DNA of 64,000 bases from Macrostomum lignano (Eukaryota). The position numbers and the translations under genes were made by a program. A model generated the notes under the pieces. That model was not told where the DNA came from, did not search any database, and saw only the letters and a program-made list of their open reading frames with translations. Positions 17,746 to 62,114 of this stretch are shown in pieces; position 1 is the stretch's first letter, and each line of letters opens with the position of its first letter. The stretch is taken from positions 124,001 through 188,000 of the forward strand of contig NIVC01000461.1 in NCBI GenBank assembly GCA_002269645.1. The letters are read 5' to 3'.

Positions 17746-17904
17746 TAATTACGAGTATCTGTCATATGCGCTACAAATTGAATAACTGTTTTTTATCCAC
17801 TAGTTGTAGTATGCTATGCACTTTACAAGCTTAATGTACACGATCATTCGCTTAATATAATCGCGCATTCATATGGAAAGAGTGATGTGATTTGAAGTGT
17901 GAAG

Positions 17905-18340
17905 AAGACAGAGGGGCGGGGAGTGAGGTGGTTGGAATTTGAAATGGGCAGAGGGGCAGGGAGTGAGGTGGTTGGAAGTTGAAATGGGCAGAGGGACAGG
18001 GAGTGAGGTGGTTGGAATTTGAAGTGGGCAGAGGGACAGGGAGTGAGGTGGTTGGAAGTTGAAATGGGCAGAGGGACAGGGAGTGAGGTGGTTAGAAGTT
18101 GAAGTGGGCAGAGGGACAGGGAGTGAGGTGGTTAGAAGTTGAAGTGGACAGAGGCGCAGGGAGTGAGAGGGTTGAAAGTTAAAATGGGCGGAGGGGCAGG
18201 GAGTGAGGTGGTTAGAAGTTGAAATGGGCAGAGGGACAGGGAGTGAGGTGGTTAGAAGTTGAAGTGGACAGAGGCGCAGGGAGTGAGGTGGTTGGAAGTT
18301 AAAATGGGCAGAGGGGCAGGGAGTGAGGTGGTTAGAAGCA
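17905..18340. repeat. About 40-bp minisatellite
   Basis: Unit gggcagagggacagggagtgaggtggttggaagttgaaat. Confidence 0.9.
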
Positions 18341-19284
18341 TAAAGAAGGGTTTGAGAGGTACCAGCTACCCGCAGCATAAAAGCTCTGGTTGTTCCAAAA
18401 TTCTCACCTTTTGCTGAAAGACAACTCTTGGCTTCGAGGTCTTAAATAAGCGCATTTTCCACAAAAAGCTATAAAATATTTTCTTAGTCATTCAAGCGTT
18501 GCGCAATCTTTAATTGAGATGGTTGAAATGCGATTGTTTGCTTAACTACTATTTTTCATACACTTGGCTACTACTTGAATATTATAAACATTTTTTCACA
18601 CTAAATGCGAGCATACTGTTCCACACTGCGAGCTCAGACTCCCAAAATGAGTTCTCTTGCGCTGTACATCTCTTGTACAGATTGTGATTAACTACATTTT
18701 CTAGTAAATCTAATTTGGTTACAAGTGCCAGCTCAGCTGATTGACTTTGAGCTGTTGTGCTTCCAATATAGCGAGTCGCGAGACCGTGCTCCTGTCAGCT
18801 GCAACACGCTCGACATGCTTGTCTATGCATCAGCAGTACAATAGCTTCCAGAACATTTCCACTATTGCCTTCCTATTTGTTTTGCTTTGTATACTGGATA
18901 GAAAACATATTTTAAGGCTGGTACAACAGTTCCATTTTAGATTGTAAGCAAATCAGCATTGATGGTCAACTGCCAGCAGGATGACCTTCCCCTTTGCACC
19001 TCGCAGCATCAGCTAACATCTTTTGTGAAAGCACCCCTGCACAACTGCTACAGAATGCTGAAGTTTAATATTTTTGCACCAAAATGTTAAATAAATTTTA
19101 TTGATGCCGTTGCACTGAAGTTTTTCCACTTTTTCTTTCACTGAAATTTGTTCTTTCCGCCACTGTCTACTTAAAAACGTAATTTGTTGTGTTAGTTTAT
19201 GGAAGGTTGCACTTTTGACGCTGGTCTAATAAATATTCCATATCACGCCCTGTACGATCCTTGATTACCGCATGTTACAACTCC

Positions 19285-34800: not shown

Positions 34801-37186
34801 CAGGCATGACAAAAGCTGAAATTTGGTTGTCTCCCAGTCAATAGTTTATCGAGTTGTCTATGGCTCAACCTGTGGTGTCCTCTACAGGCATGACAAAAGT
34901 TAAAGTTTGCACGAACCCTTGTTGGCGGCAGGCCGTCCCTGGAGGCGGTGGCCCAGTGCACAGTAAAGCTGTTGATGCTGTTAGCCAGAACGATGCCAGA
35001 CCGGGACAGCGAGTTGAAGTAGATGCCAGACAGCAGGTGCCCGTCAGCAACGATGGGGAACCTGTCCGCTGTCAGGCGGTGCAGCAGCTGCTCCGCGCCG
35101 CCTGCGGATGAGTTGGGGAAGGAAATGGCCGCTGGGTGGCAGAGTTGGAGCTGTGACGTGAGAAGAGAAGTCAAGGAAGGGTCCATATGGGGGCTAAGGG
35201 GAGCTAATATGGGGGCTAAGGGAAGCTAATATGGGGCTAAGGGGAGCTAATATGGGGGCTAAGGGTGAGCTAATATGGGGGCTAAGGGGAGCTAATATGG
35301 GGGCTAAGGGGAGCTAATATGGGGGCTAAGGGAAGCTAATATGGGGGCTAAGGGGAGCTAATATGGGGGCTAAGGGTGAGCTAATATGGGGGCTAAGGGG
35401 AGCTAATATGGGGGCTAAGGGGAGCTAATATGAGGGCTAAAGGAAGCTAATATGAGAGCTAAGGGTGAGCTAATATGGGGGCTAAGGGGAGCTAATATGG
35501 GGGCTACGGGTGAGCTAATACGGGGGCTAAGGGGAGCTAATATGGGGGCTAAGGGTGAGCTAATATGGGGGCTAAGGGAAGCTAATATGGGGGCTAAGGG
35601 GAGCTAATATGGTGGCTAAGGGGAGCTAATATGGGGGCTAAGGGGAGCTAATATGGGGGCTAAGGGGAGCTAATATGGGGGCTAAGGGGAGCTAATATGG
35701 TGGCTAAGGGGAGTTAATATAGGGGCTAAGGGGAGCTAAAATGAAGGCTAAGGGTGGAATAATATGAGGGCTAAGGGTGAGCTAATATGAGGGCTAAGGG
35801 GAGCTAATATGGGGGCTAAGGGTGAGCTAATATGGGGGCTAAGGGGAGCTAATATGAAGGCTAAGGGGAGCTAATATGAAGGCTATTTTTTATTAGAGGC
35901 AGGGGGGTTGTGTGCACCCTGGCGCACTTTAAGCGTCATTGGCACACAACCGGCGAGAGGCATTACTGCCCATTCCGCCGACTCCCCTGAGCAGGCATAC
36001 AAGCGCGCGGATACGTACGCAGGCACACACTCACACAGGAGTGCACAGCGGCCCTAACTTTATTTTATCGTTAGGCATGTACACTTCACTGCGCCTTGGG
36101 GGGTTGGCTCTCAAGGCCGTTAATTGCACGAGCAGAGCCAAGTCGAGATTCCAATTCAGCCCCAAATTAATGTGACTGCACTGGGAATCGAGCCTGGGTC
36201 GCTGGCACACCAGAGCCTGCGCTAGACTGCTGGGCTACGGTCCCCCTAATATATAATGAGGGCTAAGGGGAGCTAATATGGAGGCTAAGGGAAGCTAATA
36301 TGAAGGCTAAGGGGTGCTAATATAAAGGCTAAGGGGAGCTAATATGAAGGCTAAGGGTGGACTAATATGAGGGCTAGGGTGAGCTAATATGGGGCTAAGG
36401 GAAGCTAATATGGGGGCTAAAGGGAGCTAGTATGGGGCTAAGGATTAGCTAATATAAGGGCTAAGGGAAGCTAATATGGGGGCTAAGGATTAGCTAATAT
36501 AAGGGCTAAGGGAAGCTAATATGGGGGCTAAGGATTAGCTAATATAAGGGCTAAGGGAAGCTAATATGGGGGCTAAGGATTAGTTAATATAAGGGCTAAG
36601 GGAAGCTAATATGGGGGCTAAGGATTAGTTAATATAAGGGCTAAGGGAAGCTAATATGGGGGCTAAGGATTAGTTAATATAAGGGCTAAGGGAAGCTAAT
36701 ATGGGGGCTAAGGATTAGCTAATATAAGGGCTAAGGGAAGCTAATATGGGGGCTAAGGATTAGTTAATATAAGGGCTAAGGGAAGCTAATATGGGGGCTA
36801 AGGATTAGCTAATATAAGGGCTAAGGGAAGCTAATATGGGGGCTAAGGATTAGCTAATGTAAGGGCTAAGGGAAGCTAATATGGGGGCTAAGGATTAGCT
36901 AATATAAGGGCTAAGGGAAGCTAATATGGGGCTAAGGATTAGCTAATATAAGGGCTAAGGGAAGCTAATACGGGGGTTTGAGAGACGGGTGCTGCAGAGG
37001 GTGTCACGTGAGCGCCAACTCACCTCTCGGCTTGCAGCGGGGCCGCAGCGGGTTTTTAGCGCTGAGCAGCATCATCTGTGAGATCACTGACTCAAGCATT
37101 TGCCGTTCAAACCAGACGTTCAACTCGCCGCTGCAAGCGACAGCCGCCAGCAGCAGGAGGAGGCTGAGGCGCAGCGGACCCGACAT
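30713..37186 (-). CDS. Secreted WIF-domain protein with polybasic C-terminal tail, 5 exons, 307 aa
   Basis: Exons 37186-37024, 35101-34917, 32821-32719, 32056-31913, 31041-30713 (924 nt, phases 1/0/1/1). Signal peptide [23 protein letters not shown]-like sequence ELNVWFE...FPIVADG...INSFTVHW...[30 protein letters not shown]...[19 protein letters not shown]...FRKAC aligns by eye to the WIF1 WIF domain, including both disulfide Cys. The tail is Arg/Lys-rich. Confidence 0.85.
31084..31903. repeat. (GCCT)n grading into (GTCT)n microsatellite
   Basis: Fills the last intron of the WIF-domain gene. Confidence 0.98.
32263..32560 (+). mobile_element. tRNA-derived CORE-like SINE (family A), copy 3
   Basis: ggggttgtagcctactggttagagcgtcggactcacgactgtaaggtcgggggttcgattcccgac...cttgagcaagacacttaactc. 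Confidence 0.8.
33004..33513. mobile_element. Foldback/MITE-like element with inverted arms of about 155 bp
   Basis: 33004-33160 is nearly the reverse complement of 33359-33513. Each arm contains a GTCTATGG-N-CCATAGAC palindrome. Confidence 0.8.
34590..34900. repeat. 86-bp tandem repeat, each unit ending in GTCTATGG
   Basis: GTCTATGG at 34598, 34684, 34770 and 34856. Confidence 0.9.
35188..36975. repeat. 22-23-bp minisatellite interrupted by a SINE
   Basis: Unit atatgggggctaaggggagcta; lies in WIF-domain gene intron 1. Confidence 0.95.
35885..36246 (-). mobile_element. tRNA-derived SINE (family B), copy 2, inside the minisatellite
   Basis: Reverse-complement match to 16898-17260. Confidence 0.8.
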
Positions 37187-45620: not shown

Positions 45621-48600
45621 ATGAGTCATCAACGCCTGATCCAAGCGCTGGTATTCGCAGCTCTGGTCGCGCTGCTAGTCTGCCAGACCGAGGCTGATCC
45701 GGCCAAGAAGTGAGCTGGGAATTGGGGCAGAGGGCGGCTGCGGGGTAAGTGATTGGCATGGGGAAGGGAGGGGGTGGCTGGGGTGAGTGATTGGCATGGG
45801 GAACGGAGGGGGTGGCTGGGGTGAGTGTTTGGCATGGGGAAGGGAGGGGTGGCTGGGTGAGTGTTTGGCATGGGGAAGGGAGGGGTGGCTGGGGTGAGTG
45901 ATTGGCATGGGGAAGGGAGGGGTGGCTGGGTGAGTGTTTGGCATGGGGAAGGGAGGGGTGGCTGGGGTGAGTGATTGGCATGGGGAAGGGAGGGGTGGCT
46001 GGGGTGAGTGTTTGGCATGGGGAAGGGAGGGGTGGCTGGGGTGAGTGATTGGCATGGGGAAGGGAGGGGTGGCTGGGGTGAGTGTTTGGCATGGGGAAGG
46101 GAGGGGGTGGCTGGGGTGAGTGTTTGACATGGGGAAGGGAGGGGTGGCTGGGTGAGTGTTTGGCATGGGGAAGGGAGGGGTGGCTGGGGTGAGTGATTGG
46201 CATGGGGAAGGGAGGGGTGGCTGGGGTGAGTGTTTGGCATGGGGAAGGGAGGGGTGGCTGGGGTGAGTGATTGGCATGGGGAAGGGAGGGGTGGCTGGGG
46301 TGAGTGTTTGGCATAGGGAAGGGAGGGGTGGCTGGGGTGAGTGTTTGGCATAGGGAAGGGAGGGGTGGCTGGGGTGAGTGTTTGGCATGGGGAAGGGAGG
46401 GGTGGCTGGGGTGAGTGATTGGCATGGGGAAGGGAGGGGTGGCTGGGGTGAGTGATTGGCATGGGGAAGGGAGGGGGTGGCTGGGGTGAGTGTTTGGCAT
46501 GGGGAAGGGAGGGGTGGCTGGGGTGAGTGTTTGGCATAGGGAAGGGAGGGGTGGCTGGGGTGAGTGTTTGGCATGGGGAAGGGAGGGGGTGGCTGGGGTG
46601 AGTGTTTGGCATGGGGAAGGGAGGGGTGGCTGGGGTGAGTGTTTGGCATAGGGAAGGGAGGGGTGGCTGGGGTGAGTGTTTGGCATGGGGAAGGGAGGGG
46701 TGGCTGGGGTGAGTGATTGGCATGGGGAAGGGAGGGGTGGCTGGGGTGAGTGATTGGCATGGGGAAGGGAGGGGGTGGCTGGGGTGAGTGTTTGGCATGG
46801 GGAAGGGAGGGGGTGATTTGCATTCGTGTTGATTCTCAGATCTTATCGATTATAACAACTCGTATGTGCTTTCAATAAGTTCACAATGTTCGTTCGCGAG
46901 TGAATCATTCTAAATAAAGGCTTTCAGTGACCAAAAAAGTTTTTAGTGCTTTCGCCGGTTCAGAAATTTCTCTTTATCACTGGCTGTTTGCGGAGCATCC
47001 GGGCTTTCAAGTCATAGAGTCGGATTCCCCAGCTGAAGTGGAATAGCTAGCTGGGCGCACGCAAGGCCCCGGTAAAAGTTCACGCTGGCATCAGGTCCTG
47101 AGCTTCTTGGAGGAAAATTCCTTAAAGTTTTCAAAAAAATCCCTGCTATTTAATCAAACCAGTTTTGTTCCATTGTTACTAATTCCTATTTCTTATGCAT
47201 TTCTTGTATATTTTTTTCGATTTGATTGCTAGCAAGTTAAGCATAGTTGGCAGCGGTTAGCAGCCCTGACTAGATAAAGCTGAGAGCTCAAGCTCATCCC
47301 CTGCTGGCAGCACTGCACAAGAAGCACAACCATAGGATCTGCTGGCTTTGCTAGTATACTCTGCAATATTGCATGTATAATTTATCAATAATTCAATTCA
47401 AGCATATTGCACATCCGCCCCCATTTTCAGAAGCGCCTCGCAACACGCCGCGCAGAGGGCCAAGTAAGCGGAGCAGTTCTGTTGCAAGAAACCCAATTAG
47501 CAAAAATTTAGGCTTTAAAATTTTCAAAGGTTAAAAAATTGAGCATAGCGAATTTGATATTGTTGGATTGGAAAGCATTTTAGCTAAGATAGGGGGCGGG
47601 AAGGCAGATTCATTTCAACGGCTTGATTGAGAATTTGATAGTCCTGAAACAGCTTGGAATTGCCTCCCCCAAAGCAAGAAGGAAATGGATGTGAAAACTG
47701 CTTACAGTCCGCTGTAAGGTGTAAAAATGTATATAAAATCCCTATACTAAAAAACATTCCACAGGCGATTCTCGGCTCCACAGGCGTTCGACTGGAAAAA
47801 GTGAGCGCTTTCAGTGCCTCGAAGTTCGTTTATTGAGAACTCAAAAAAGGAGGAACTGAGCTTTGAAATCGGGCGGATGTTGGGGGACTGGGGAAAGACA
47901 GGGTGAAAACAGCAACTCATCCGCCCGGGAGCTTAGTTGAAGAGGGGCGTGACGCCAGCCACACAATGCAACTCCAACCCCATTGCTTTTGTAGGAAGCG
48001 CTTCTCCGCTCCCCAGGCCTTTGACTGGCGGTAAGGCAACGGTGACTTCAGTCTGTTCCAGTTGCTCAGTTTCAATTGAGTCTCGTGCTCAACTGCTCAG
48101 TCGCTAACTGGCGCGACCACTTATATCGATTTTGTTTTGTCTTAAAGATTAGCAGTGTAAAAGTGCAAGTTGATAGATTAATAAAGTGAATTACTAATCT
48201 AGCCTACACGGATAAAGGAGTAGAATGGATTGCTAATCTAGCCTACACGGATAAAGGAGTAGAATGGATTGCTAATCTAACCTACACAGATAAAGGATAG
48301 AATCGATTTCTAATCTAGCCTACACAGATAAAGGATAGAATGGATTGCTAATCTAGCCTACACGGATAAAGGAGTAGAATGGATTGCTAATCTAACCTAC
48401 ACAGATAAAGGATAGAATCGATTTCTAATCTAGCCTACACAGATAAAGGATAGAATGGATTGCTAATCTAGCCTACACAGATAAAGGATACAATGGATTG
48501 CTAATCTAGCCTACACAGATAAAGGAGTAGAATGGATTGCTAATCTAGCCTACATGGATAAAGGAGTAAAATGAATTGCTAATCTAGCCTACATGGATAA

Positions 48601-51600
48601 AGGAGTAGAATGGATTGCTAATCTAGCCTACACGGATAAAGGAGTAGAATGGATTGCTAATCTAGCCTACACGGATAAAGGAGTAGAATGGATTGCTAAT
48701 CTAGCCTACACAGATAAAAGATAGAATGGATTTCTAATCTAGCTTACATGGGGGGGATAAAGGATAGACTGGATTGCTAATCTAGCCTACACAGATAAAG
48801 GATAGAATCGATTTCTAATCTAGCCTACACAGATAAAGGATAGACTGAATTGCTAATCTAGCCTACACGGATAAAGGATAGAATCGATTTCTAATCTAGC
48901 CTACACAGATAAAGGATAGAATGGATTGCTAATCTAGCCTACACAGATAAAGGATAGAATGGATTGCTAATCTAGCCTACACAGATAAAGGATAGAATGG
49001 ATTGCTAATCTAGCCTACACGGATAAAGGATAGAATCGATTTCTAATCTAGCCTACACAGATAAAGGATAGAATGGATTGCTAATCTAGCCTACACGGAT
49101 AAAGGAGTAGAATGGATTGCTAATCTAACCTACACAGATAAAGGATAGAATGGATTGCTAATCTAGCCTACACAGATAAAGGATACAATGGATTGCTAAT
49201 CTAGCCTACACGGATAAAGGATAGAATCGATTTCTAATCTAGCCTACACAGATAAAGGATAGAATGGATTGCTAATCTAGCCTACACAGATAAAGGATAG
49301 AATCGATTTCTAATCTAGCCTACACAGATAAAGGATAGAATGGATTGCTAATCTAGCCTACACAGATAAAGGATAGAATGGATTGCTAATCTAGCCTACA
49401 CGGATAAAGGAGTAGAATGGATTGCTAATCTAACCTACACAGATAAAAGATAGAATGGATTGCTAATCTAGCCTACACGGATAAAGGAGTAGAATGGATT
49501 GCTAATCTAGCCTACACAGATAAAGGATAGAATGGATTGCTAATCTAGCCTACACAGATAAAGGATAGAATGGATTGCTAATCTAGCCTACACGGATAAA
49601 GGAGTAGAATGGATTGCTAATCTAACCTACACAGATAAAAGATAGAATGGATTGCTAATCTAGCCTACACAGATAAAAGATAGAATGGATTGCTAATCTA
49701 GCCTACACAGATAAAAGATAGAATGGATTGCTAATCTAGCCTACACAGATAAAGGATAGAATGGATTTCTAATCTAGCCTACACAGATAAAGGAATAGAA
49801 TGGATTGCTAATCTAGCCTACATGGATAAAGGATAGAATGAATTGCTAATCTAGCCTACACAGATAAAGGATAGACTGAATTGCTAATCTAGCCTACACA
49901 GATAAAGGAATAGAATGAATTGCTAATCTAGCCTACACAGATAAAGGATAGAATGGATTGCTAATCTAGCCTACACAGATAAAGGATAGACTGAATTGCT
50001 AATCTAGCCTACACAGATAAAGGATAGACTGGATTGCTAATCTAGCCTACACAGATAAAGGAATTGAATGGATTGCTAATCTAGCCTACACAGATAAAGG
50101 AATTGAATGGATTGCTAATCTAGCCTACACGGATAAAGGAGTAGAATGGATTGCTAATCTAGCCTACACGGATAAAGGAATAGAATGGATTGCTAATCTA
50201 GCCTACATGGATAAAGGATAGAATGGATTGCTAATCTAGCCTACACAGATAAAGGAATAGAATGGATTGCTAATCTAGCCTACATGGATAAAGGAATAGA
50301 ATGGATTGTTAATCTAGCCTACATGGATAAAGGAATAGAATGGATTGCTAATCTAGCCTACATGGATAAAGGAATAGAATGGATTGCTAATCTAGCCTAC
50401 ACAGATAGAGGAATAGAATGGATTGCTAATCTAGCCTACACGGATAAAGGATTAGAGTGGATTGCTAATCTAGCCTACACGGATAAAGAATTGAATGGAT
50501 TGCTAATCTAGCCTACATGGATAAAGGAATAGAATGGATTGCTAATCTAGCCTACACGGATAAAGAATTGAATGGATTGCTAATCTAGCCTACATGGATA
50601 AAGAATTGAATGGATTGCTAATCTAGCCTACATAGATAAAGGATAGAGTGGATTGCTAATCTAGCCTACACGGATAAAGAATAGAATGGATTGCTAATCT
50701 AGCCTACATGGATAAAGAATTGAATGGATTGCTAATCTAGCCTACACAGATAAAGGAATAGAATGGATTGCTAATCTAGCCTACACAGATAAAGGAATTG
50801 AATGGATTGCTAATCTAGCCTACATGAATAAAGGAATAGAATGGATTGCTAATCTAGCCTACACAGATAAAGGAATTGAATGGATTGCTAATCTAGCCTA
50901 CATGAATAAAGGAATAGAATGGATTGCTAATCTAGCCTACACGGATAAAGGAATAGAATGGATTGCTAATCTAGCCTACATGGATAAAGGATAGAATGGA
51001 TTGCTAATCTAGCCTACACAGATAAAGGAATAGAATGGATTGCTAATCTAGCCTACATGGATAAAGGAATAGAATGGATTGCTAATCTAGCCTACACAGA
51101 TAGAGGAATAGAATGGATTGCTAATCTAGCCTACACGGATAAAGGATTAGAGTGGATTGCTAATCTAGCCTACACGGATAAAGAATTGAATGGATTGCTA
51201 ATCTAGCCTACATGGATAAAGGATAGAGTGGATTGCTAATCTAGCCTACATGGATAAAGAATTGAATGGATTGCTAATCTAGCCTACAAAGGCGGTGAGT
51301 GGGATTTTGCCGAAAGGAATTTAGAATAGACAGTAGTTCAAAAGCAGACCTAAAGACGAATTCAGCCTCCCAGCACCTCACACTGGCACTGCCTCTCTGC
51401 ACCCTGCAGCAAGCGGTTCTCCGCTCCCCAGGCGTTCGACTGGAAGTAAGTGGCTTTAAACTGCTCTGGGGCTTCGCCCCTGATGCTTGGCAACTAAACA
51501 GCAGTGCAAAATTAACTTTCTTTCCTTTATTCTTTTTGTTGTCTAGGAAGCGATTCTCGGCCCCTCAGGCGTTCGACTGGAGGTGAGTAGCGCGCTTTCC

Positions 51601-54250
51601 AGATGCGGTGAAAATCTGCTTGATTGCTTGCAGAACTCAATGCTGCCTTTGTTATTGCCTTGGTTTTGTCGCATTTTCAGGAAGCGGTTCTCCGCTCCAC
51701 ATGCATTCGACTGGAGGTGAGTTGGCTCGCTAATTAATAAATAGGTGCAAATATAATTATAGAATCAGTAGTAAGCTATGCCTTTAATAAAAACACTCTG
51801 ATACACTTTTTTAATATTTTAGAAAGCGATTCTCCGCTCCGCAGGCTTTTGACTGGAGGTGAGTTTGGCCAGTTCATGGACTACTGAACTGCTGCCGCTT
51901 GTCGAACTCCTTGGCTAGAATAGAGATAGCACCGGCGACAGCACAAGGGACAACACCAGGGGCAGCACCAGGGACAGCAACCGGGATAGTACCAGGGACA
52001 GTTCCAGGGACAACACCGAGGACAGCAGAGGGAGCAACACGGGGGGCAACGACGGGGACAGCACCGGGGGCAACACCGGGGACAACACCAGGGACGACAC
52101 CGGGGACAGCACCAGGGACAACACCAGGGACAACACCGGGGACAACATCAGGGACAACACCGGGGACAACACCGGGGACAACACCAGGGACAACACCAGG
52201 GACAACACCGGGGACAGCATGGGAACAACACCGGGGACAGCACCGGGGACAACACCAGGGACAGCACCAGGGACAGCATCGAGGCTAGAAGTGGGAATAG
52301 CACCGGGGGACAGCAGTGGAAGATATTTCTGCAGCAATGCAGAAAGAAAAAAGCAGATAGGTCACGACTTCTTGAAAGTTCATGACCCCAGGGTCCATCA
52401 CTTGATAAGCGTCACAGCGGCCATTACGAGTAATCTGCATCCATCATCTCATATCAATAAATTTCTTCACTTAATTTCAGGAAGCGGTTCTCCGCTCCTC
52501 AAGCATTCGACTGGAAGTGAGCCCAAGCTTATAACTGCAATTGTGATGCGCATTTTTAATAAATTATGCATTGCAATTAAGCAATTATAATTCCCTATAC
52601 AAATTCTAATTATAGGAAGCGGTTCTCTGCTCCCCAGGCCTACGATTGGAAGTGCGTAATTTAAAAAATATTTTTAATCTTACTTTTATGTTGCTAATTA
52701 CCAGAAACAAGACAGAATAATGGGTAAAAGACGAGAGTAATTATCCCTATCTGTTAGTAGTTAAATGCTTCGCCGCCTGATTAGTCTTTCTAATTTGAAA
52801 TTTTTAGGAAGCGCTTCAGTGCCCCGATGGCGTACGACTGGAAGAAGTGAGTTTGATAATTTTTAAGACAGATGCTGCAACACAGAGGCCAAAAAATATG
52901 GGGTGAATTCACTCTCTGCGATTTTTTCACAATGTTTAAATTTTAAAGCTTGGTAAATTCTGATACATTACAGTATTTAACTGGTTTTGAAGTTATGAGG
53001 AAATATTAAGGGGCCATGAAGTCAAAAAATAAAAGCACGAGGTCATGAGATACTTCATGATGTAGGAGTATGACTTCATGATGTAGGAGTATGACTTCAT
53101 GATGTAGGAGTATGACTTCATGATGTAGGAGTATGACTTCATGATGTAGGAGTATGACTTCATGATGTAGGAGTATGACTTCATGATGTAGGAGTATGAC
53201 TTCATGATGTAGGAGTATGACTTCATGATGTAGGAGTATGACTTCATGATGTAGGAGTATGACTTCATGATGTAGGAGTATGACTTCATGATGTAGGAGT
53301 ATGAGATCATGAGGTCATGAGGTTGGAGTATGACTTCATAATGTAGGAGTATGAGGTCATGAGGTAGGAGTATGACTTCATGATGTAGGAGTATGACTTC
53401 ATGATGTAGGAGTATGACTTCATGATGTAGGAGTATGACTTCATGATGTAGGAGTATGACTTCATGATGTAGGAGTATGACTTCATGATGTAGGAGTATG
53501 CTTCATGATGTAGGAGTATGACCTCATGATGTAGGAGTATGAGGTCATGAGGTAGGAGTATGACTTCATGACGTAAGAGTATGAGGTCATGAGGTCATGA
53601 GGTAGAATTATGATTTCATTATGTAGGAGTATGAGGTCATGAGCTAGGAGCATGAGGTCATAAAGCTAGGAAAATGAGGTCAGAATGGGAGACGTCATGT
53701 TGATGTGTATTACACTCATCTATAAGCCAGAGCGCGACTCATCCATTGCGTCTTTTTTCAATTCTGTGGCATCGAGTGCACCATATTTGGCTAATGCGCG
53801 CACTGCATTAGAAAGTTAAGCGCTGCAAATGCGGGAGTCGGCAACAGGGAAGTCCCAGTCAGCTCAAGGAAGACTTTTTATCGTTCTCTTTTTCATTCAG
53901 ATCGCCCAATGAATTTTAGTCACGCCCCAGTCACAGAGCGGCCCTGCTGTCGGGATTAATTCAATTGCTTTCGGCTTCATCAACTAAGAAGAGTTTATTT
54001 GGTCTATTTTAGAATATTAAAGACTGAATAGACAAATAATTTTAGTCTGCATTAATATTGCGTTGAGAATTAAATTCTATGATTAGCTGCCGGCACGGCA
54101 AGGTTAAGCAAATTCGGCAGCGGTTAGCAACAAGCTGCTGTACAGGCAACGCGTCCGGGTACCTTGGGTTCGATTCCTATCCGAAGCATCAAATATCCCA
54201 CTAAATTCCCGCCCCTCTCCAGGCGCAGGGCTGACGCTGATGAAGAGTGA
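45621..54250 (+). CDS. Secreted multi-copy neuropeptide-like precursor (nine FSAP[Q/H/M]A[F/Y]DW peptides), 12 coding exons, 158 aa
   Basis: Exons 45621-45709 (signal peptide MSHQRLIQALVFAALVALLVCQTEA), 47431-47463, 47765-47800, 47995-48030, 51410-51445, 51547-51582, 51681-51716, 51823-51858, 52481-52516, 52616-52651, 52808-52846, 54223-54250. All junctions are AG/GT and phase 2; total 477 nt. Product: ...QRA-KR-FSAPQAFDW-KKKR-FSAPQAFDW-RKR-...-FSAPMAYDW-KKRR-ADADEE*. AATAAA at about 54498. The terminal exon is the least certain. Confidence 0.9.
45745..46815. repeat. About 38-bp G-rich minisatellite, about 28 copies, each containing GGGTGAGT
   Basis: Unit gggtggctggggtgagtgtttggcatggggaagggag, starting just after the signal-peptide exon donor. 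Confidence 0.95.
48195..51290. repeat. 38-39-bp minisatellite, about 80 copies, in a peptide-precursor intron
   Basis: Unit ctagcctacacggataaaggagtagaatggattgctaat. Confidence 0.97.
51930..52280. repeat. 12-bp intronic repeat (ccggggacaaca)n
   Basis: Lies between microexons 51823-51858 and 52481-52516; produces the spurious GTTP ORF. Confidence 0.9.
53045..53650. repeat. 21-bp minisatellite
   Basis: Unit atgatgtaggagtatgacttc. Confidence 0.95.
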
Positions 54251-54669
54251 GCAGCCAGGAGCTGAAAGCCGAGGACAAACGGATGGCCTGGATGACGCCA
54301 GCAACATTAACATTGGACCCGACCATCAGACGCATGTCAGAGATGATAAAAAATAATATTTTAAGAATCAGCCCACTTATATTAATCTCACTTTTGTTCC
54401 AAGCGCTTTGAATGTCCTTCGCGAACTAAGTGTAAACCCCCAGCAGTAACCACAGTTACACCTGCCATCAAGTGTCCGCAACAATTCCGCAACAAGAAAT
54501 AAAGCTTAACAACTCATTGACAAGCAGCGGAAAGCCGTCACTGCCGCAAAAAATACGGAGTCTTATTAAATATAAAACAATATCTATATAATTATTGTTC
54601 AATGTTGACTTTTCTGCCAAAGCAGTACTAAAGGTTTGAGTGAGAAGTCTGAAGAGTCATCTCGGGGAT

Positions 54670-55025: not shown

Positions 55026-55564
55026 AGACTGACAGTTCCTCCTAAAAGGGTCCCTACTATTTAGCCAGAAACAGAGCAAGAATGGCCCACACAGACCATT
55101 TTTACCAATGTCATTTGGCTCTCACAGCTCCGACAGTCCATCAATCAATCAATCAATCAATTCGCGAGTTATCAATAGATCCGGTGCCCAGTCGAACCGC
55201 AGCAGCCCCCCCTCCCAAACTGTCTCATGTAATATTAACTAGCGGGCAGCTCTGAAGAGCTAGGCTAGGTGGAGGTCCAAAGTGCACAGCCCAGTTCCAA
55301 GCTGGCCCGCACGAAGTGGAGAAATCTGTTCCTTCTCTCTAGACACTATTTGCTAGCCGCTGCATAATTTATGCTAATTAAACGAAACGCTTTTTACGAA
55401 GAATTTTGTTCAAGCGCGCGACTGCAATTAAGTAGCCGTGCTCATGGAACCACTGCGTGTGTGCTCACACTGTGAGCAGCTGTCGTCGCTAAATTTAACA
55501 CCGCTTTCCCCCGTCACTCTTAGGTAACCGTTTGTTAAATTAGGTAATGAGTTGGTGAGATCTT

Positions 55565-58500
55565 TATTCAGATAGGTGAAGTTCTGTATTCAGATTGGTG
55601 AATTCTGTATTCAGATTGGGGAATTCTGTATTCAGATTGGTGAATTCTGTATTCAGATTGGGGAATTCTGTATTCAGATTGGTGAATTCTGTATTCAGAT
55701 TGGGGAATTCTGTATTCAGATTGGTGAATTCTGTATTCAGATTGGTGAATTCTGTATTCAGATTGGTGAATTCTGTATTCAGATTGGTGAGTTCTGTATT
55801 CAGATTGGTGAATTCTGTATTCAGATTGGGGAATTCTGTATTCAGATTGGGGAATTCTGTATGCAGATTGGTGAATTCTGTATGCAGATTGGTGAATTCT
55901 GTATTCAGATTGGGGAATTTCTGTATTCAGATTGGTGAATTCTGTATTCAGATTGGTGAATTCTGTATTCAGATTGGTGAATTCTGTATTCAGATTGGTG
56001 AATTCTGTATTCAGATTGGTGAATTCTGTATTCAGATTGGTGAGTTCTGCATTCAGATTGGGGAATTTCTGTATTCAGATTGGTGAATTCTGTATTCAGA
56101 TTGGTGAATTCTGTATTCAGATTGGTGAATTCTGTATTCAGATTGGTGAATTCTGTATTCAGATTGGTGAATTCTGTATTCAGATTGGTGAGTTCTGTAT
56201 TCAGATTGGTGAATTCTGCATTCAGATTGGGGAATTTCTGTATTCAGATTGGTGAATTTCTGTATTCAGATTGGTGAATTCTGTATTCAGATTGGTGAAT
56301 TCTGTATTCAGATTGGGGAATTCTGTATTCAGATTGGTGAATTCTGTATTCAGATTGGGGAATTCTGTATTCAGATTGGTGAATTCTGTATTCAGATAGG
56401 TGAATTTCTGTATTCAGATTGGGGAATTCTGTATTCAGATTGGGGAATTCTGTATGCAGATTGGTGAATTCTGTATTCAGATTGGGGAATTCTGTATGCA
56501 GATTGGTGAATTCTGTATTCAGATTGGGGAATTTCTGTATTCAGATTGGTGAATTCTGTATTCAGATTGGTGAGTTTTGTATTCAGATTGGTGAATTCTG
56601 CATTCAGATTGGGGAATTTCTGTATTCAGATTGGTGAATTTCTGTATTCAGATTGGTGAATTCTGTATTCAGATTGGTGAATTCTGTATTCAGATTGGTG
56701 AATTCTGTATTCAGATTGGGGAATTCTGTATTCAGATTGGTGAATTCTGTATTCAGATTGGGGAATTCTGTATTCAGATTGGTGAATTCTGTATTCAGAT
56801 AGGTGAATTTCTGTATTCAGATTGGGGAATTCTGTATTCAGATTGGGGAATTCTGTATTCAGATTGGTGAATTCTGTATTCAGATTGGTGAGTTCTGTAT
56901 TCAGATTGGGGAATTCTGTATTCAGATTGGTGAGTTCTGTATTCAGATTGGGGAATTTCTGTATTCAGATTGGTGAGTTTTGTATTCAGATTGGTGAGTT
57001 CTGTATTCAGATAGGTGAATTTCTATATTCAGATAGGTGAATTCTGTATTCAGATTGGTGAATTCTGTATTCAGATTGGTGAATTCTGTATTCAGATTGG
57101 TGAATTCTGTATTCAGATTGGTGAATTTCTGTATTCAGATTGGTGAATTTCTGTATTCAGATTGGGGAATTCTGTATTCAGATTGGTGAATTCTGTATTC
57201 AGATTGGGGAATTCTGTATTCAGATTGGTGAATTCTGTATTCAGATTGGGGAATTCTGTATTCAGATTGGTGAATTCTGTATTCAGATTGGTGAATTCTG
57301 TATTCAGATTGGTGAATTCTGTATTCAGATTGGTGAATTCTGTATTCAGATTGGTGAATTCTGTATTCAGATTGGTGAATTCTGTATTCAGATTGGTGAA
57401 TTCTGTATTCAGATTGGTGAGTTCTGTATTCAGATTGGTGAATTCTGTATTCAGATTGGGGAATTCTGTATTCAGATTGGGGAATTCTGTATGCAGATTG
57501 GTGAATTCTGTATGCAGATTGGTGAATTCTGTATTCAGATTGGGGAATTTCTGTATTCAGATTGGTGAATTCTGTATTCAGATTGGTGAATTCTGTATTC
57601 AGATTGGTGAATTCTGTATTCAGATTGGTGAATTCTGTATTCAGATTGGTGAATTCTGTATTCAGATTGGTGAGTTCTGCATTCAGATTGGGGAATTTCT
57701 GTATTCAGATTGGTGAATTCTGTATTCAGATTGGTGAATTCTGTATTCAGATTGGTGAATTCTGTATTCAGATTGGTGAATTCTGTATTCAGATTGGTGA
57801 ATTCTGTATTCAGATTGGTGAGTTCTGTATTCAGATTGGTGAATTCTGCATTCAGATTGGGGAATTTCTGTATTCAGATTGGTGAATTTCTGTATTCAGA
57901 TTGGTGAATTCTGTATTCAGATTGGTGAATTCTGTATTCAGATTGGGGAATTCTGTATTCAGATTGGTGAATTCTGTATTCAGATTGGGGAATTCTGTAT
58001 TCAGATTGGTGAATTCTGTATTCAGATAGGTGAATTTCTGTATTCAGATTGGGGAATTCTGTATTCAGATTGGGGAATTCTGTATGCAGATTGGTGAATT
58101 CTGTATTCAGATTGGGGAATTCTGTATGCAGATTGGTGAATTCTGTATTCAGATTGGGGAATTTCTGTATTCAGATTGGTGAATTCTGTATTCAGATTGG
58201 TGAGTTTTGTATTCAGATTGGTGAATTCTGCATTCAGATTGGGGAATTTCTGTATTCAGATTGGTGAATTTCTGTATTCAGATTGGTGAATTCTGTATTC
58301 AGATTGGTGAATTCTGTATTCAGATTGGTGAATTCTGTATTCAGATTGGGGAATTCTGTATTCAGATTGGTGAATTCTGTATTCAGATAGGGGAATTCTG
58401 TATTCAGATTGGTGAATTCTGTATTCAGATAGGTGAATTTCTGTATTCAGATTGGGGAATTCTGTATTCAGATTGGGGAATTCTGTATGCAGATTGGTGA

Positions 58501-58925
58501 ATTCTGTATTCAGATTGGGGAATTTCTGTATTCAGATTGGTGAATTCTGTATTCAGATTGGTGAGTTTTGTATTCAGATTGGTGAATTCTGTATTCAGAT
58601 TGGTGAGTTCTGTATTCAGATTGGTGAGTTCTGTATTCAGATTGGTGAATTCTGTAATCAGATTGGTGAATTCTGTATTCAGATTGGTGAATTCTGTATG
58701 CAGATTGGTGAGTTCTGTATTCAGATTGGGGAATTCTGTATTCAGATTGGGGAATTCTGTATTCAGATTGGTGAATTTCTGTATTCAGATTAGGGAATTC
58801 TGTATTCAGATTGGTGAGTTCTGTATTCAGATTGGTGAGTTCTGTATTCAGATTGGTGAATTCTGTATGCAGATTGGTGAGTTTTGTATTCAGCTTGGTG
58901 AATTCTGTATGCAGATTGGTGAATT
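55565..58925. repeat. 21/22-bp satellite with a 1,630-bp higher-order duplication
   Basis: Unit ctgtattcagattggtgaatt; variant patterns recur at an offset of exactly 1630 bp. Confidence 0.97.
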
Positions 58926-60080: not shown

Positions 60081-62114
60081 TCAGCGCGCAGTCGTGCACT
60101 CGCGCACCCAGCCGGCGCACAGATCGGCCATTTCAACTGAATGCTCCAGCACGAAGGCGTGGGCAACGTCGCCTTCGTCTAGTCTGGCGTCGACCTCCGG
60201 GCAGCTGCGACGCATGTCAGCGAAGTATTCGGTGGGACACCAGTGATCGTCAGTGCCGTAGTACAGCAGGATCCGCTGGCTGTGCTGCCTGATGGTGGCC
60301 AAGTCCGGCTGGCGGACGTCCTGCATCTCCGTGTGCGCCATGTACAGCACGTTGCCAAGGACGCTAGGCGATAGCAACAGGCGCTCAGTGGCCGCCACGG
60401 CGCCCGGGTTGGCGTTAGAATGGCCAACTGCGCTGAGACAGCGCGCGGCGAAGCCCCGGCGCCAGGCCAGAGGAATCAGCAGAGACAGCAGGGCGACCAG
60501 CGCCATCGCCAGCCAGCGGAGCGGCGCCAGCGACAGCAGCGGAGCGACGATGCGGCCCTGCGGCGATTCGCGCATCCGCTCGATGGTGGGGAACAGCAGC
60601 AGGCAGCGGGCCACCCTGTCGGTGCCGCGGGCTTGGCGACGAAGCAGCTCCAGGATCATCTGGCACCCGATTGAGTGCCCGATCAGCACCATTTTTGCCT
60701 GCAATGCCGTGCATCAGACACTGGGGCTCCTGAAGTATGGGGATCTGGGAGACTGGGGCTCCTGAAGTATGGGGATCTGGGACACTGGGGCTCCTGAAGT
60801 ATGGGGATCTGGGACACTGGGGCTCCTGAAGTATGGGGATCTGGGAGACTGTGGCTCCTGAAGTATGGGATCTGGGAGACTGGGGCTCCTGAAGTATGGG
60901 ATCTGGGAGACTGGGGCTCCTGAATTATGGGATCTGGGAGACTGGGGCTCCTGAAGTATGGGGATCTGGGAGACTGGGGCTCCTGAAGTATGGGATCTGG
61001 GAGACTGGGGCTCCTGAAGTATGGGGATCTGGGAGACTGGGGCTCCTGAAGTATGGGGATCTGGGAGACTGGGGCTCCTGAAGTATGGGGATCTGGGAGA
61101 CTGAGGCTACTGAAGTATGGGGATCTGGGAGACTGGGGCTCCTGAAGTATAGGGATCTGGGTGACTGGGGCTCCTGAAGTATGGGGATCTGGGACACTGG
61201 GGCTCCTGAAGTATAGGGATCTGGGTGACTGGGGCTCCTGAAGTATGGGGATCTGGGAGACTGGGGCTTCTGAAGTATGGGATCTGGGAGACTGGGGCTC
61301 CTGAAGTATGGGATCTGGGAGACTGGGGCTCCTGAAGTATGGGGATCTGGGAGACTGGGGCTCCTGAAGTATAGGGATCTGGGAGACTGGGGCTCCTGAA
61401 GTATGGGGATCTGGGACACTGGGGCTCCTGAAGTATAGGGATCTGGGTGACTGGGGCTCCTGAAGTATGGGGATCTGGGAGACTGGGGCTCCTGAAGTAT
61501 GGGGATCTGGGAGACTGAGGCTACTGAAGTATGGGAATCTGGGAGACTGGAGCTCCTGAAGTATGGGGATCTGGGAGACTGTGGCTCCTGAAGTTTTGGG
61601 ATCTGGGAGACTATGGCTCCTGAAGTATGGAAATTTGGGATACTGAGCTTCCTGTAATATGAGGATCTGGGAGACTGGGCTTCCTGTAACATGGGGATCT
61701 GAGAGTCTGGAGATATTTTCAAGGCCAGTCATTTGGGGTTGAGAAATTCCCCTGAGAAGACTGGGTGATTACATACAAAATAACTTTGATAGCAGAGCAA
61801 AGTGAGACTTAGCGTCTTACATCTTCAGGTAGAGCAGTTTCCAGGAATTTTACTTTGTGTTCAACTTGCTCAGCAAGAGAAAACTTCTTGCTAGAATTGA
61901 AGGAGTCCCCATGGCCACGATGGCTAAGAGCCCAGACATGGACTTGGCCATCCAGTTTTGTCCAGAGAGAGTGCATGAATTCTTCATAGTAACCCACTAT
62001 TCCTGGATTTCCTGGAATCACAATGGCATACCAGTTGCTATCTAGAGCATCCAACTTATATAAAGAGGCCTCTGACTCAAGATGCCTCATTTTAGGTGAA
62101 ACTTCAGGTGGCAT
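60081..62114 (-). CDS. LDAH: Lipid droplet-associated hydrolase (alpha/beta hydrolase), 2 exons, about 303 aa
   Basis: Exons 62114-61821 (IPGNPG..YY..F, VWALSHRGH, QVEHKVKFL) and 60698-60081 (LIGHSIG nucleophile elbow, LLFPTIERMRESPQG, YYGTDDHWCP, HAFVL), joined by a phase-0 GT-AG intron. The start codon is inferred. Confidence 0.9.
60715..61725. repeat. 31-32-bp minisatellite filling the LDAH intron
   Basis: Unit gggagactggggctcctgaagtatggggatct. Confidence 0.95.

What the first reader, a model, noticed from the sequence alone, without database searches (positions are those of the whole stretch)
45621..54250. Hidden neuropeptide-like precursor built as one peptide per microexon (nine FSAPxA[F/Y]DW modules)
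Seen in sequence: a signal-peptide exon, a 33-nt linker exon, then nine microexons (eight of 36 nt, one of 39 nt) with canonical AG/GT borders, all phase 2-2. Each encodes one peptide with its basic flank: FSAPQAFDW x6, FSAPHAFDW, FSAPQAYDW, FSAPMAYDW. The split codon at each junction is always Lys or Arg, so the splice junctions complete the basic clusters. Synonymous sites differ freely (CGA/CGC/CGG, TCG/TCC/TCT/AGT) while amino acids are conserved, and the introns show no visible similarity to each other, which points to old exon duplication under purifying selection. Established: signal peptide plus KR-flanked repeats is the prohormone-convertase substrate architecture; no Gly follows the Trp, so the peptides would not be amidated. 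Inference: any subset of symmetric exons could be skipped in frame, so splicing could tune peptide copy number and variant mix, as in schistosome micro-exon genes. I do not recognise the peptide as a described family, and ab initio predictors would probably miss the gene.
Basis: partly seen in the sequence, partly recalled or inferred. Interest (0 to 1): 0.95.

Follow-up and report, generated by a model that had tools for sequence, protein, structure and literature searches.

The report
Micro-exon peptide precursor gene, Macrostomum lignano
A flatworm gene encodes nine copies of a short secreted peptide, each on its own 36-base exon, while its sister genes in the same genome encode the same kind of peptide in one uninterrupted exon; the sequence shows the structure, but expression and function are untested.

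Summary
Twelve + strand exons (45621-54250), all with AG/GT borders and all joined in phase 2, give a 477-nt CDS of 158 aa. It has a signal peptide, a 33-nt linker and nine micro-exons, each coding for K/R-R plus FSAP[Q/H/M]A[F/Y]DW.

The exon cores are 80% identical and their intron flanks are at random level. pN/pS is about 0.1, with synonymous sites near saturation.

The window is Macrostomum lignano.

New here: the peptide belongs to a small M. lignano family. Mlig001773.g8 encodes FSAPGTYDW x8 and Mlig017890/Mlig030851 encode FVQPGTYDW. These genes have the same 36-nt unit and the same KKR/RKR spacers, but they are intronless and their units are about 95% identical.

I found no relative outside M. 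lignano, no Pfam match and no literature match.

The best reading is a secreted multi-copy propeptide, cut at tribasic sites into free-acid nonapeptides, in a gene with schistosome-MEG-like architecture that arose by old duplication of an exon-plus-intron unit.

Transcription, processing, cell type and exon skipping remain untested.

The parts
45621..45709 (+). Exon 1. It holds the start codon, the signal peptide (MSHQR / LIQALVFAALVALLVC / QTEA, likely cleaved before DP) and the start of the pro-region. It ends ..AAGAA|GTGAGC in phase 2.
   Evidence: An in-frame TAA lies 12 nt upstream of the ATG, with no AG between them and no upstream in-frame ATG. The hydrophobic core has a mean Kyte-Doolittle value of 2.82. 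The same exon appears in UniProt A0A1I8IJ07.
47431..47463 (+). Exon 2, a 33-nt symmetric linker micro-exon coding for (K)SASQHAAQRA(K). It is predicted and is the least certain internal exon.
   Evidence: It has the acceptor ccattttcag| and the donor |gtaagc, and it is the best-scoring non-module candidate in the introns. The A0A1I8IJ07 model joins E1 directly to M1.
47765..47800 (+). Micro-exon M1 (36 nt): (K)R-FSAPQAFDW-K-K.
47995..48030 (+). Micro-exon M2 (36 nt): KR-FSAPQAFDW-(R). It ends in CG, and the next exon is the only one that starts with C, giving CGC = Arg.
51410..51445 (+). Micro-exon M3 (36 nt): KR-FSAPQAFDW-(K).
   Evidence: The M3-M7 chain is identical to UniProt A0A1I8HD77.
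51547..51582 (+). Micro-exon M4 (36 nt): KR-FSAPQAFDW-(R).
51681..51716 (+). Micro-exon M5 (36 nt): KR-FSAPHAFDW-(R).
51823..51858 (+). Micro-exon M6 (36 nt): KR-FSAPQAFDW-(R).
52481..52516 (+). Micro-exon M7 (36 nt): KR-FSAPQAFDW-(K).
52616..52651 (+). Micro-exon M8 (36 nt): KR-FSAPQAYDW-(K). Its donor is GTGCGT.
52808..52846 (+). Micro-exon M9 (39 nt): KR-FSAPMAYDW-K-(K). It is the most divergent unit, and its Ser codon is AGT.
54223..54250 (+). Last coding exon: (K)RRADADEE followed by the TGA stop. This is a short acidic tail like those of the paralogues (KKRNEE*, KKKSME*).
   Evidence: Caveat: the stop lies inside GAAGA|GTGAGC, which looks like a donor site.
54498..54503 (+). Candidate polyadenylation signal, AATAAA, 248 nt after the stop.
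   Evidence: Motif match only.
45742..46812 (.). Minisatellite in intron 1 (37 bp x 29).
48190..51288 (.). Minisatellite in intron 4 (38 bp x 80). It accounts for about 3.1 kb of the 3.4-kb intron between M2 and M3.
51937..52275 (.). Minisatellite in intron 8 (12 bp x 28).
53052..53592 (.). Minisatellite in intron 11 (21 bp x about 25).

Best explanation
This is a real, spliced, protein-coding gene of Macrostomum lignano. It encodes a 158-aa secretory pre-propeptide.

Shown by the sequence:
- An N-terminal signal peptide.
- A short pro-region.
- Nine 12-residue units, each made of [K/R]-K-R plus F-S-A-P-x-A-[F/Y]-D-W.
- A short acidic tail.
- Each unit is exactly one symmetric phase-2 micro-exon, and the splice junction falls inside the first basic codon.

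Inferred from established prohormone biochemistry: after signal-peptide removal, subtilisin-like proprotein convertases cut after the K/R-K-R sites. M. lignano has a nervous-system pc2 homologue (PMC4490696). A carboxypeptidase then trims the basic residues. This would release nine free-acid nonapeptides with no amidation: six FSAPQAFDW and one each of FSAPHAFDW, FSAPQAYDW and FSAPMAYDW. They would act as extracellular signals, most probably neuro-endocrine, though the cell type is unknown.

The gene belongs to a small family found only in M. lignano, with the motif F-x-x-[P/A]-x-x-[F/Y]-D-W. The other members carry the same 36-nt unit as uninterrupted single-exon arrays.

The micro-exon layout is best explained by old tandem duplication of an exon-plus-intron unit. 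All introns sit at the homologous position. Synonymous sites are near saturation, so unrecognisable introns are what one would expect. Minisatellites later expanded several introns.

One consequence is that the units in this gene escape the homogenisation seen in the intronless paralogues. Variant peptides can therefore persist.
For: Structure:
- 12 exons, 11 GT-AG introns (7 GTGAG, 3 GTAAG, 1 GTGCG), uniform phase 2, a 477-nt ORF, and every junction codon K or R.
- The only exon starting with C follows the only exon ending in CG, so that junction still codes for Arg.

Selection:
- Exon cores are 80% identical and intron flanks 26-31%.
- pS = 0.64, pN = 0.065, ratio 0.10. All four codons are used at Pro and Ala sites, and Ser is coded by both TCN and AGT. 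The only amino-acid changes are Q to H or M and F to Y.

Signal peptide: a charged n-region, a 16-residue hydrophobic core and T-E-A at positions -3 to -1. An in-frame stop just upstream of the ATG makes this an independent start.

Independent gene models: A0A1I8HD77 joins M3-M7 at exactly these junctions.

Family:
- PAA48327.1 and PAA83548.1/PAA73271.1/PAA59548.1 have a signal peptide, a short spacer, KR-FSAPGTYDW or KR-FVQPGTYDW units with KKR/RKR spacers, and tails KKKSME* or KKRNEE*.
- Their loci are continuous ORFs of eight 36-nt units at about 95% nucleotide identity.
- They come from the RNA-seq-based Mlig_3_7 annotation, so the family is transcribed.
- F, D, W, the Pro and the flanking K-R are conserved across all 25 units of the three genes.
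Against: - I could not obtain any transcript, peptide or expression datum for this locus. No Mlig_3_7 (BOX15_) protein for it turned up, though the word-indexed search is clearly incomplete, since it also missed P0002.
- The older UniProt models read the last exon in another frame and skip or truncate M8 and M9.
- E2 is optional in one model.
- The stop codon coincides with a donor-like GTGAG.
- No homologue exists outside M. lignano, so there is no cross-species conservation to lean on.
- The pro-protein is very basic (pI about 10.9 after signal-peptide removal) and rich in aromatic residues. That would also suit an uncleaved structural or adhesive secreted protein.
Confidence: 0.65

Rival explanations
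1. The gene and its processing are the same, but the peptides are exocrine rather than neuronal. They would be made in gland cells and released to the outside or into the partner, as a pheromone, a defence peptide or a seminal-fluid peptide. The amphibian skin-gland caerulein genes, which also put one peptide on each small exon, would be the analogy.
For: - Nothing in the sequence specifies neurons.
- The peptides lack amidation, which is common though not universal in flatworm neuropeptides.
- The family is lineage-specific, as reproductive and secretory genes of M. lignano often are. In that species 35-45% of genes are Macrostomum-specific and such genes are enriched in the germline set (PMC5816591).
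- Schistosome MEG products are gland or epithelium secretions (PMC4350168).
Against: - Short multi-copy peptides cut at tribasic sites and under strong purifying selection are the classic neuropeptide layout.
- M. lignano pc2 is expressed in the nervous system (PMC4490696).
- There is no direct evidence either way.
Confidence: 0.2
2. The product is a secreted, intrinsically disordered, basic and aromatic repeat protein that is not cut into peptides. This would be a MEG-type or adhesive, mucus or eggshell-type protein. The K/R clusters would serve cation-pi or charge interactions rather than convertase cleavage.
For: - pI is about 10.9, and each 12-residue unit has 3 basic and 3 aromatic residues.
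- The MEG-like gene structure.
- No Pfam domain.
Against: - The invariant K-R immediately before every Phe in 25 units of three diverged genes.
- Strict conservation of a 9-mer, with pN/pS 0.1 after synonymous saturation.
- The short acidic C-terminal tail is typical of propeptides.
- Structural repeat proteins are usually much longer.
Confidence: 0.1
3. The locus is a non-expressed relic, or a redundant homeologue decaying in a polyploid genome. The exon chain would then be conserved only by history.
For: - M. lignano is a hidden polyploid with many duplicated blocks.
- One paralogue copy (L003) carries frameshifting indels.
- The A0A1I8IJ07 copy has Leu in place of the initiator Met.
- No transcript-based model for this locus was found.
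Against: - In this window all 22 splice dinucleotides, the start codon, the reading frame and the stop are intact.
- Nine units have reached near-saturated synonymous divergence with almost no amino-acid change. That pattern requires long-lasting selection on a translated, spliced product.
Confidence: 0.04

Closest known systems
M. lignano paralogues Mlig001773.g8 (PAA48327.1) and Mlig017890.g1/g3 and Mlig030851.g1 (PAA73271.1, PAA83548.1, PAA59548.1), all named 'hypothetical protein'
   Same: - Same species and same design: signal peptide, short spacer, 12-residue units of KKR/RKR plus F-x-x-P-x-x-[F/Y]-D-W, and a short acidic tail.
- Same 36-nt unit length, and no amidation Gly.
   Different: - The paralogues are intronless continuous ORFs. 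Their eight units are about 95% identical at DNA level, with pS 0.11-0.23.
- The window gene has one unit per micro-exon, 11 introns and pS 0.64.
- The signal peptides are not alignable.
- The peptide core is GTYDW in the paralogues and QAFDW or xAYDW here.
[quoted passage not shown] 2010, as described in PMC4350168 and PMC10526429)
   Same: - Both are from the phylum Platyhelminthes.
- The signal peptide sits on a conventional 5' exon.
- Most of the CDS (here 360 of 477 nt, 75%) lies in very small symmetric exons separated by much longer introns.
- Any exon can be skipped in frame.
- Such genes are hard for automatic annotation.
   Different: - There is no sequence similarity to any MEG. An exhaustive HMMER search found hits only in M. 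lignano.
- Here the micro-exons are paralogous copies of one cassette, each a complete peptide plus a cleavage site.
- MEG products are known as secreted proteins at the host-parasite interface under accelerated evolution. Here there is strong purifying selection.
- The host is free-living and belongs to Macrostomorpha, an early-diverging flatworm lineage (own knowledge). MEG organisation had been listed as a proposed neodermatan gain (PMC4398949).
S. mansoni tandemly repeated 81-base exons (Davis et al. 1988, cited in PMC10526429; the 10.3/MEG-4 gene)
   Same: In a flatworm, tandemly repeated small exons each encode one copy of a protein repeat. Multiple transcripts differ in repeat number. 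I know this only from the title and citation; the paper was not held.
   Different: The units are 81 nt, not 36 nt. They have no dibasic flanks and the product is not a short-peptide precursor.
Xenopus laevis caerulein precursor genes (recalled from memory: Vlasak et al. 1987; not verified here)
   Same: One bioactive peptide copy with its processing sites per small exon (about 45 bp). Copy number in the mRNA varies through alternative splicing.
   Different: It is a vertebrate skin-gland peptide of the CCK/gastrin type, amidated and sulfated, with far fewer copies. It is evolutionarily unrelated.
Classical multi-copy neuropeptide precursors (FMRFamide/FLP-type genes; flatworm npp/spp genes of Collins et al. 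2010, PMC2953531)
   Same: A signal peptide plus many copies of one short peptide bounded by KR/KKR sites, with convertase and carboxypeptidase processing.
   Different: - Copies usually share one or a few exons.
- Most flatworm examples are amidated.
- None of the 51 Schmidtea prohormones contains FDW, YDW or DWKK strings.
Myoinhibitory peptide / Wamide family (W-X6-W-amide)
   Same: A roughly 9-residue peptide with an aromatic N-terminus and a C-terminal Trp, in a multi-copy precursor.
   Different: There is no Gly for amidation in any of the 25 units. The N-terminal residue is Phe, not Trp, and no sequence match exists. It is not a member.

Membership tests
Micro-exon gene (MEG) architecture | Most of the coding region is made of very small symmetric exons (length a multiple of 3, typically 36 nt or less). 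| tested here: met
   Ten internal exons of 33, 36 (x8) and 39 nt make up 360 of 477 nt (75%). All are phase 2 to phase 2. The definition is from PMC4350168.
Micro-exon gene (MEG) architecture | The product carries a signal peptide, encoded on a conventional flanking exon. | tested here: met
   E1 (89 nt) encodes MSHQR plus a 16-residue hydrophobic core plus QTEA. This was judged by manual n/h/c-region criteria; no SignalP run was possible.
Micro-exon gene (MEG) architecture | Sequence homology to one of the described schistosome or trematode MEG families. | tested here: not met
   A HMMER search of 1.84 billion representative proteins gave repeat-region homologues only from M. lignano.
Micro-exon gene (MEG) architecture | Protein variation generated by alternative splicing of the micro-exons. 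| not testable with these tools
   No RNA data were available. All forward exon pairings stay in frame, and all but three (any skip that joins an exon ending in AA to M3) keep a basic junction codon.
Multi-copy neuropeptide / peptide-hormone precursor | An N-terminal signal peptide. | tested here: met
Multi-copy neuropeptide / peptide-hormone precursor | Repeated short peptides bounded by di- or tribasic convertase sites. | tested here: met
   Nine units are flanked by KR on the N-terminal side and by K/R-K-R on the C-terminal side. The same holds in 16 units of two paralogues.
Multi-copy neuropeptide / peptide-hormone precursor | Purifying selection concentrated on the peptide and its cleavage sites. 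| tested here: met
   pN/pS = 0.10 with pS = 0.64. The introns are at random identity.
Multi-copy neuropeptide / peptide-hormone precursor | Expression in neurons or endocrine cells, and detection of the mature peptides. | not testable with these tools
   No transcript or peptidomic data could be reached. Gene IDs of the paralogues were not found in the supplements searched.
M. lignano F-x-x-[P/A]-x-x-[F/Y]-D-W repeat-peptide family (defined here) | A 12-residue unit of [K/R]-K-R plus a 9-mer starting with F and ending in [F/Y]-D-W, repeated in a small secreted protein with an acidic tail. | tested here: met
   phmmer E = 1.7e-17 for P0004 and 7.5e-10 for P0007. The alignment has invariant K-R-F..P..D-W columns.
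MIP / Wamide peptides | W-X6-W followed by Gly, giving a C-terminal amide. | tested here: not met
   In every unit the Trp is followed directly by K or R, and the N-terminal residue is Phe.

The most novel reading that the evidence does not exclude
A free-living flatworm of the early-diverging Macrostomorpha lineage has a true micro-exon gene in which every micro-exon is a self-contained 'peptide plus cleavage site' cassette. Regulated skipping of these symmetric exons would set the number and mix of peptides (Q, H, M and F/Y variants) released per transcript. This would show that MEG-type architecture predates parasitism. It would also show that such an architecture can arise from an ordinary tandem-repeat propeptide gene, with intronless sister genes in the same genome as the 'before' state.
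Probability: 0.3. Interest if true: 0.8.

Novelty: new variant of a known kind. Interest (0 to 1): 0.6.

Why it matters
1. It adds an undescribed secreted-peptide family to a flatworm that is a genetic model. Transgenesis and RNAi are available, and three genes give clear targets for peptidomics, in situ hybridisation and knock-down.

2. It places a gene with MEG-like architecture in a free-living macrostomid. This bears on whether micro-exon organisation is an adaptation to parasitism or an older flatworm trait. PMC4398949 raised that question explicitly.

3. The same 36-nt peptide unit exists in one genome both as homogenised single-exon arrays and as nine intron-separated exons that have diverged at synonymous sites. 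This is a natural comparison for how introns shield repeats from concerted evolution and fix copy number.

4. It is a concrete example of a gene that both ab initio and short-read-based annotation handle badly. Searches aimed at "one cassette per micro-exon" genes may find more.

Tried and rejected
**Database look-ups that gave nothing**
- The look-up of encoding contigs for A0A1I8HD77 returned nothing on record.
- A third word-indexed search, with the N-terminal 55 aa, returned nothing, not even P0002, which contains that exon. The absence of a Mlig_3_7 model for this locus is therefore not proven.
- Pfam, PDB sequence, Rfam and ARAGORN gave no meaningful hit. A very weak Rubella_Capsid match (E = 8.3) may lie behind the odd UniProt name "Coat protein"; this is a guess.

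**Literature**
- Literal searches for FSAPQAFDW, GTYDW, DWKKRF, DWRKRF, YDWKR, FDWKR, and AFDW/TYDW/AYDW combined with neuropeptide or flatworm found no relevant paper.
- The Collins 2010 supplements contain no FDW, YDW or DWKK string.
- McVeigh 2009, Wasik 2015, DeMarco 2010 and Davis 1988 are not held. I cannot exclude a prior description in those papers.
- Paralogue gene IDs were absent from two M. lignano expression supplements.

**Readings I rejected**
- The modules as part of a minisatellite or transposon. The introns are unique sequence, the modules are all on one strand, and each has exact splice signals.
- The modules as the 3' end of the upstream 19.7-40.6 kb gene, as in the fused model A0A1I8IJ07. 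There is an in-frame TAA 12 nt before the ATG with no AG in between.
- Independent intron gain in each unit. This is less parsimonious than duplication of an exon-plus-intron unit, because synonymous saturation already predicts unrecognisable introns. It is not excluded.
- The intronless paralogues as recent retrocopies of this gene. Their signal peptides and peptide cores differ too much.

Full report
**Observation**

I read the region directly. A six-frame motif search finds exactly nine F-S-A-P-x-A-[F/Y]-D-W modules in the 64-kb window, all on the + strand. Each is preceded by AG and followed by GT at fixed offsets.

I assembled E1 (45621-45709), E2 (47431-47463), M1-M9 (47765-47800, 47995-48030, 51410-51445, 51547-51582, 51681-51716, 51823-51858, 52481-52516, 52616-52651, 52808-52846) and the last exon (54223-54250). 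The result is a 477-nt ORF of 158 aa:

MSHQRLIQALVFAALVALLVCQTEADPAKKSASQHAAQRAKRFSAPQAFDWKKKRFSAPQAFDWRKRFSAPQAFDWKKRFSAPQAFDWRKRFSAPHAFDWRKRFSAPQAFDWRKRFSAPQAFDWKKRFSAPQAYDWKKRFSAPMAYDWKKRRADADEE

Every exon after E1 starts in phase 2.

- All 11 junction codons are Lys or Arg.
- The donors are GTGAG x7, GTAAG x3 and GTGCG x1, and the acceptors follow pyrimidine- or AT-rich tracts.
- Profiles built from the nine modules find no tenth or degenerate copy in the window.
- In genomic frame each module sits in a stop-to-stop ORF of 15-95 codons, so only a spliced reading is coding.

**Selection**

- The mean pairwise identity of the 33-nt cores is 0.80. Intron flanks are at 0.26-0.31, which is the random level.
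- Gapped local alignments among the module-flanking introns do not rise meaningfully above shuffled controls. The only clear similarity is one short element shared by introns 1 and 11.
- Within the R + 9-mer codons, pS = 0.64 and pN = 0.065 (Nei-Gojobori counts summed over the 36 pairs).
- Pro and the second Ala use all four codons. Arg uses CGA, CGC and CGG. Ser uses TCC, TCG, TCT and AGT. The only amino-acid changes are Q to H or M at position 5 and F to Y at position 7.
- The only exon that starts with C (M3) follows the only exon that ends in CG (M2), so the junction is still Arg.

This pattern requires long-term purifying selection on a spliced, translated product.

**Organism and existing models**

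The product hits UniProt A0A1I8HD77 of Macrostomum lignano.

- Its last 41 residues are identical to window 54230-54353, read in another frame.

The exhaustive HMMER search also returned A0A1I8IJ07 (1378 aa).

- Residues 1-1208 are collinear with window 19710-40617 at 74-100% identity, 82-100% for all but one segment.
- Its C-terminus contains E1, M1-like and M4-like modules, a retained intron and the mis-framed last exon.

So the window is M. lignano. The gene is partly present in older computational models, but no model gives the 158-aa protein. An in-frame TAA 12 nt upstream of the ATG, with no AG in between, shows that E1 is an independent start and not a continuation of the upstream gene.

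**A family, and a contrast in architecture**

The same search found PAA48327.1 (Mlig001773.g8) and PAA83548.1, PAA73271.1 and PAA59548.1 (Mlig017890.g3 and .g1, Mlig030851.g1). All are "hypothetical proteins" of M. lignano. These locus tags belong to the Mlig_3_7 annotation, which was built from RNA-seq with StringTie, TACO and TBONE (PMC5730564). The paralogues are therefore transcribed; I infer this from how the annotation was made.

Their genomic loci (L001, L002, L003) hold uninterrupted ORFs.

- The layout is a signal peptide, a 12-18-residue spacer, and eight 36-nt units.
- The units code for KR-FSAPGTYDW, or for KR-FAQAGTYDW once followed by KR-FVQPGTYDW x7, with KKR/RKR spacers.
- The tails are KKKSME* or KKRNEE*.
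- The units are about 95% identical at DNA level, with pS 0.23 and 0.11.
- The deposited 85-aa and 92-aa proteins lack exactly four units (144 nt). This is probably a collapsed-repeat artefact; I did not test it.

The unit length (36 nt), the tribasic spacers, the absence of Gly after Trp and the short acidic tail are shared by all three genes. Only the window gene is split, and it has an intron inside the first basic codon of every unit.

No relative was found outside M. lignano in 5.8 billion or 1.84 billion sequences. Pfam and PDB give nothing.

**Mechanism**

Shown by the sequence:
- A secretory signal, with a charged n-region, a 16-residue hydrophobic core of mean hydropathy 2.82, and T-E-A before the likely cleavage site.
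- Nine conserved 9-mers, each bounded by K/R-K-R.

Inferred from standard prohormone processing:
- Convertase cleavage after KR, then carboxypeptidase trimming, gives free-acid FSAPQAFDW (x6), FSAPHAFDW, FSAPQAYDW and FSAPMAYDW.
- M. lignano has a pc2 homologue expressed in the nervous system whose knock-down is lethal in juveniles (PMC4490696).

Whether the peptides are neuronal or glandular cannot be decided here.

Origin:
- All introns occupy the homologous position of the unit (TGG A[A/G]|G AAG CGN).
- Because synonymous sites are near saturation, neutral intron sequence should be unrecognisable. Old tandem duplication of an exon-plus-intron unit is therefore sufficient.
- Without their minisatellites the introns are about 100-300 nt.
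- The intron-separated units have diverged, whereas the single-exon arrays are homogenised. This fits the idea that introns suppress unequal exchange (inference).

**Comparison with known systems**

- The architecture meets the structural definition of schistosome micro-exon genes: a signal peptide, with most of the CDS in very small symmetric exons (PMC4350168; PMC10526429).
- There is no sequence relationship to MEGs. The selection regime is also the opposite of the accelerated evolution reported for them.
- MEG organisation had been listed as a proposed neodermatan gain, with the caveat that it might be older (PMC4398949).
- Flatworm precedent for tandemly repeated exons exists (Davis 1988, cited; not readable here).
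- One-peptide-per-small-exon is known, from my memory, for the Xenopus caerulein genes.
- Among flatworm prohormones, the 51 Schmidtea genes contain no FDW, YDW or DWKK string.
- No paper in the searchable library contains the peptide strings.
- McVeigh 2009 and other subscription papers could not be read, so a prior mention cannot be excluded.

**Uncertainties**

- There is no transcript evidence for this locus.
- E2 is the best candidate for the linker, but it is skipped in one model, and a second symmetric candidate lies at 47675-47713.
- The stop codon lies in a donor-like GAAGA|GTGAGC. If that donor were used, 54223-54246 would be another 24-nt symmetric exon. The paralogue tails and the AATAAA at 54498 argue for a true stop.
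- Exon skipping is possible in frame for every internal exon, but it is purely inferential.

**Verdict**

The finding is real and the structural reading is right. It is a new peptide family and an unusual, MEG-like variant of a multi-copy propeptide gene. The intronless sister genes make it more informative.

Interest 0.6.

Noticed in passing
window 1-64000; arrays at 5557-6847, 7364-8212, 35185-36976, 48190-51288, 55552-58925, 60720-61710 among others: The window is packed with long minisatellites (46 TRF rows with score 200 or more). The 41-bp array at 5557-6847 shares the GGATTGCTAATCTA core with the 38-bp array inside intron 4 of the peptide gene. This suggests a dispersed minisatellite family.
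   Followed up: partly
window about 47230-47350 (intron 1) and about 54090-54190 (intron 11): The two introns share a short element containing ggcagcggttagca (local alignment z = 14.7). The 54.1-kb copy also has a tRNA T-arm-like gggttcgattcc. ARAGORN and Rfam call no tRNA, so this may be a remnant of a tRNA-derived SINE.
   Followed up: partly
window 19710-40617 (+): A large multi-exon gene is collinear with residues 1-1208 of UniProt A0A1I8IJ07 (named 'ANK_REP_REGION domain-containing protein'). That database model wrongly fuses it to the peptide gene. Several of its introns hold CAGA/TCTG microsatellites and minisatellites.
   Followed up: partly
window 14543-15748 (-), 17869-18378 (-), 60081-60704 (-): These ORFs have Pfam matches: PAP2_C (sphingomyelin-synthase-like, E = 1e-20), a weak match to the thiamin pyrophosphokinase B1-binding domain (E = 1e-6; no single stretch passed on its own), and lipid-droplet-associated hydrolase (E = 1e-44). 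They are ordinary neighbouring genes.
   Followed up: no
window 54223-54250: The stop codon of the peptide gene overlaps GAAGA|GTGAGC, which is the same motif as the gene's other 5' splice sites. Older gene models read this exon in a +1 frame through to 54353.
   Followed up: partly
L001 10001-10402 and L002 10001-10423 (GCA_002269645.1 contigs NIVC01004175.1 and NIVC01000415.1): The deposited proteins PAA48327.1 (85 aa) and PAA83548.1 (92 aa) each lack exactly four 36-nt repeat units compared with the continuous genomic ORFs (133 and 140 aa). The cause is probably collapsed repeats in the transcript assembly.
   Followed up: partly
L003 818-1289 (NIVC01002254.1): The Mlig030851.g1 copy of the FVQPGTYDW gene has small indels that shift the frame inside the repeat array; the annotated protein reads EALCPT instead of KKRFVQP. 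This is either homeologue decay or assembly error.
   Followed up: no
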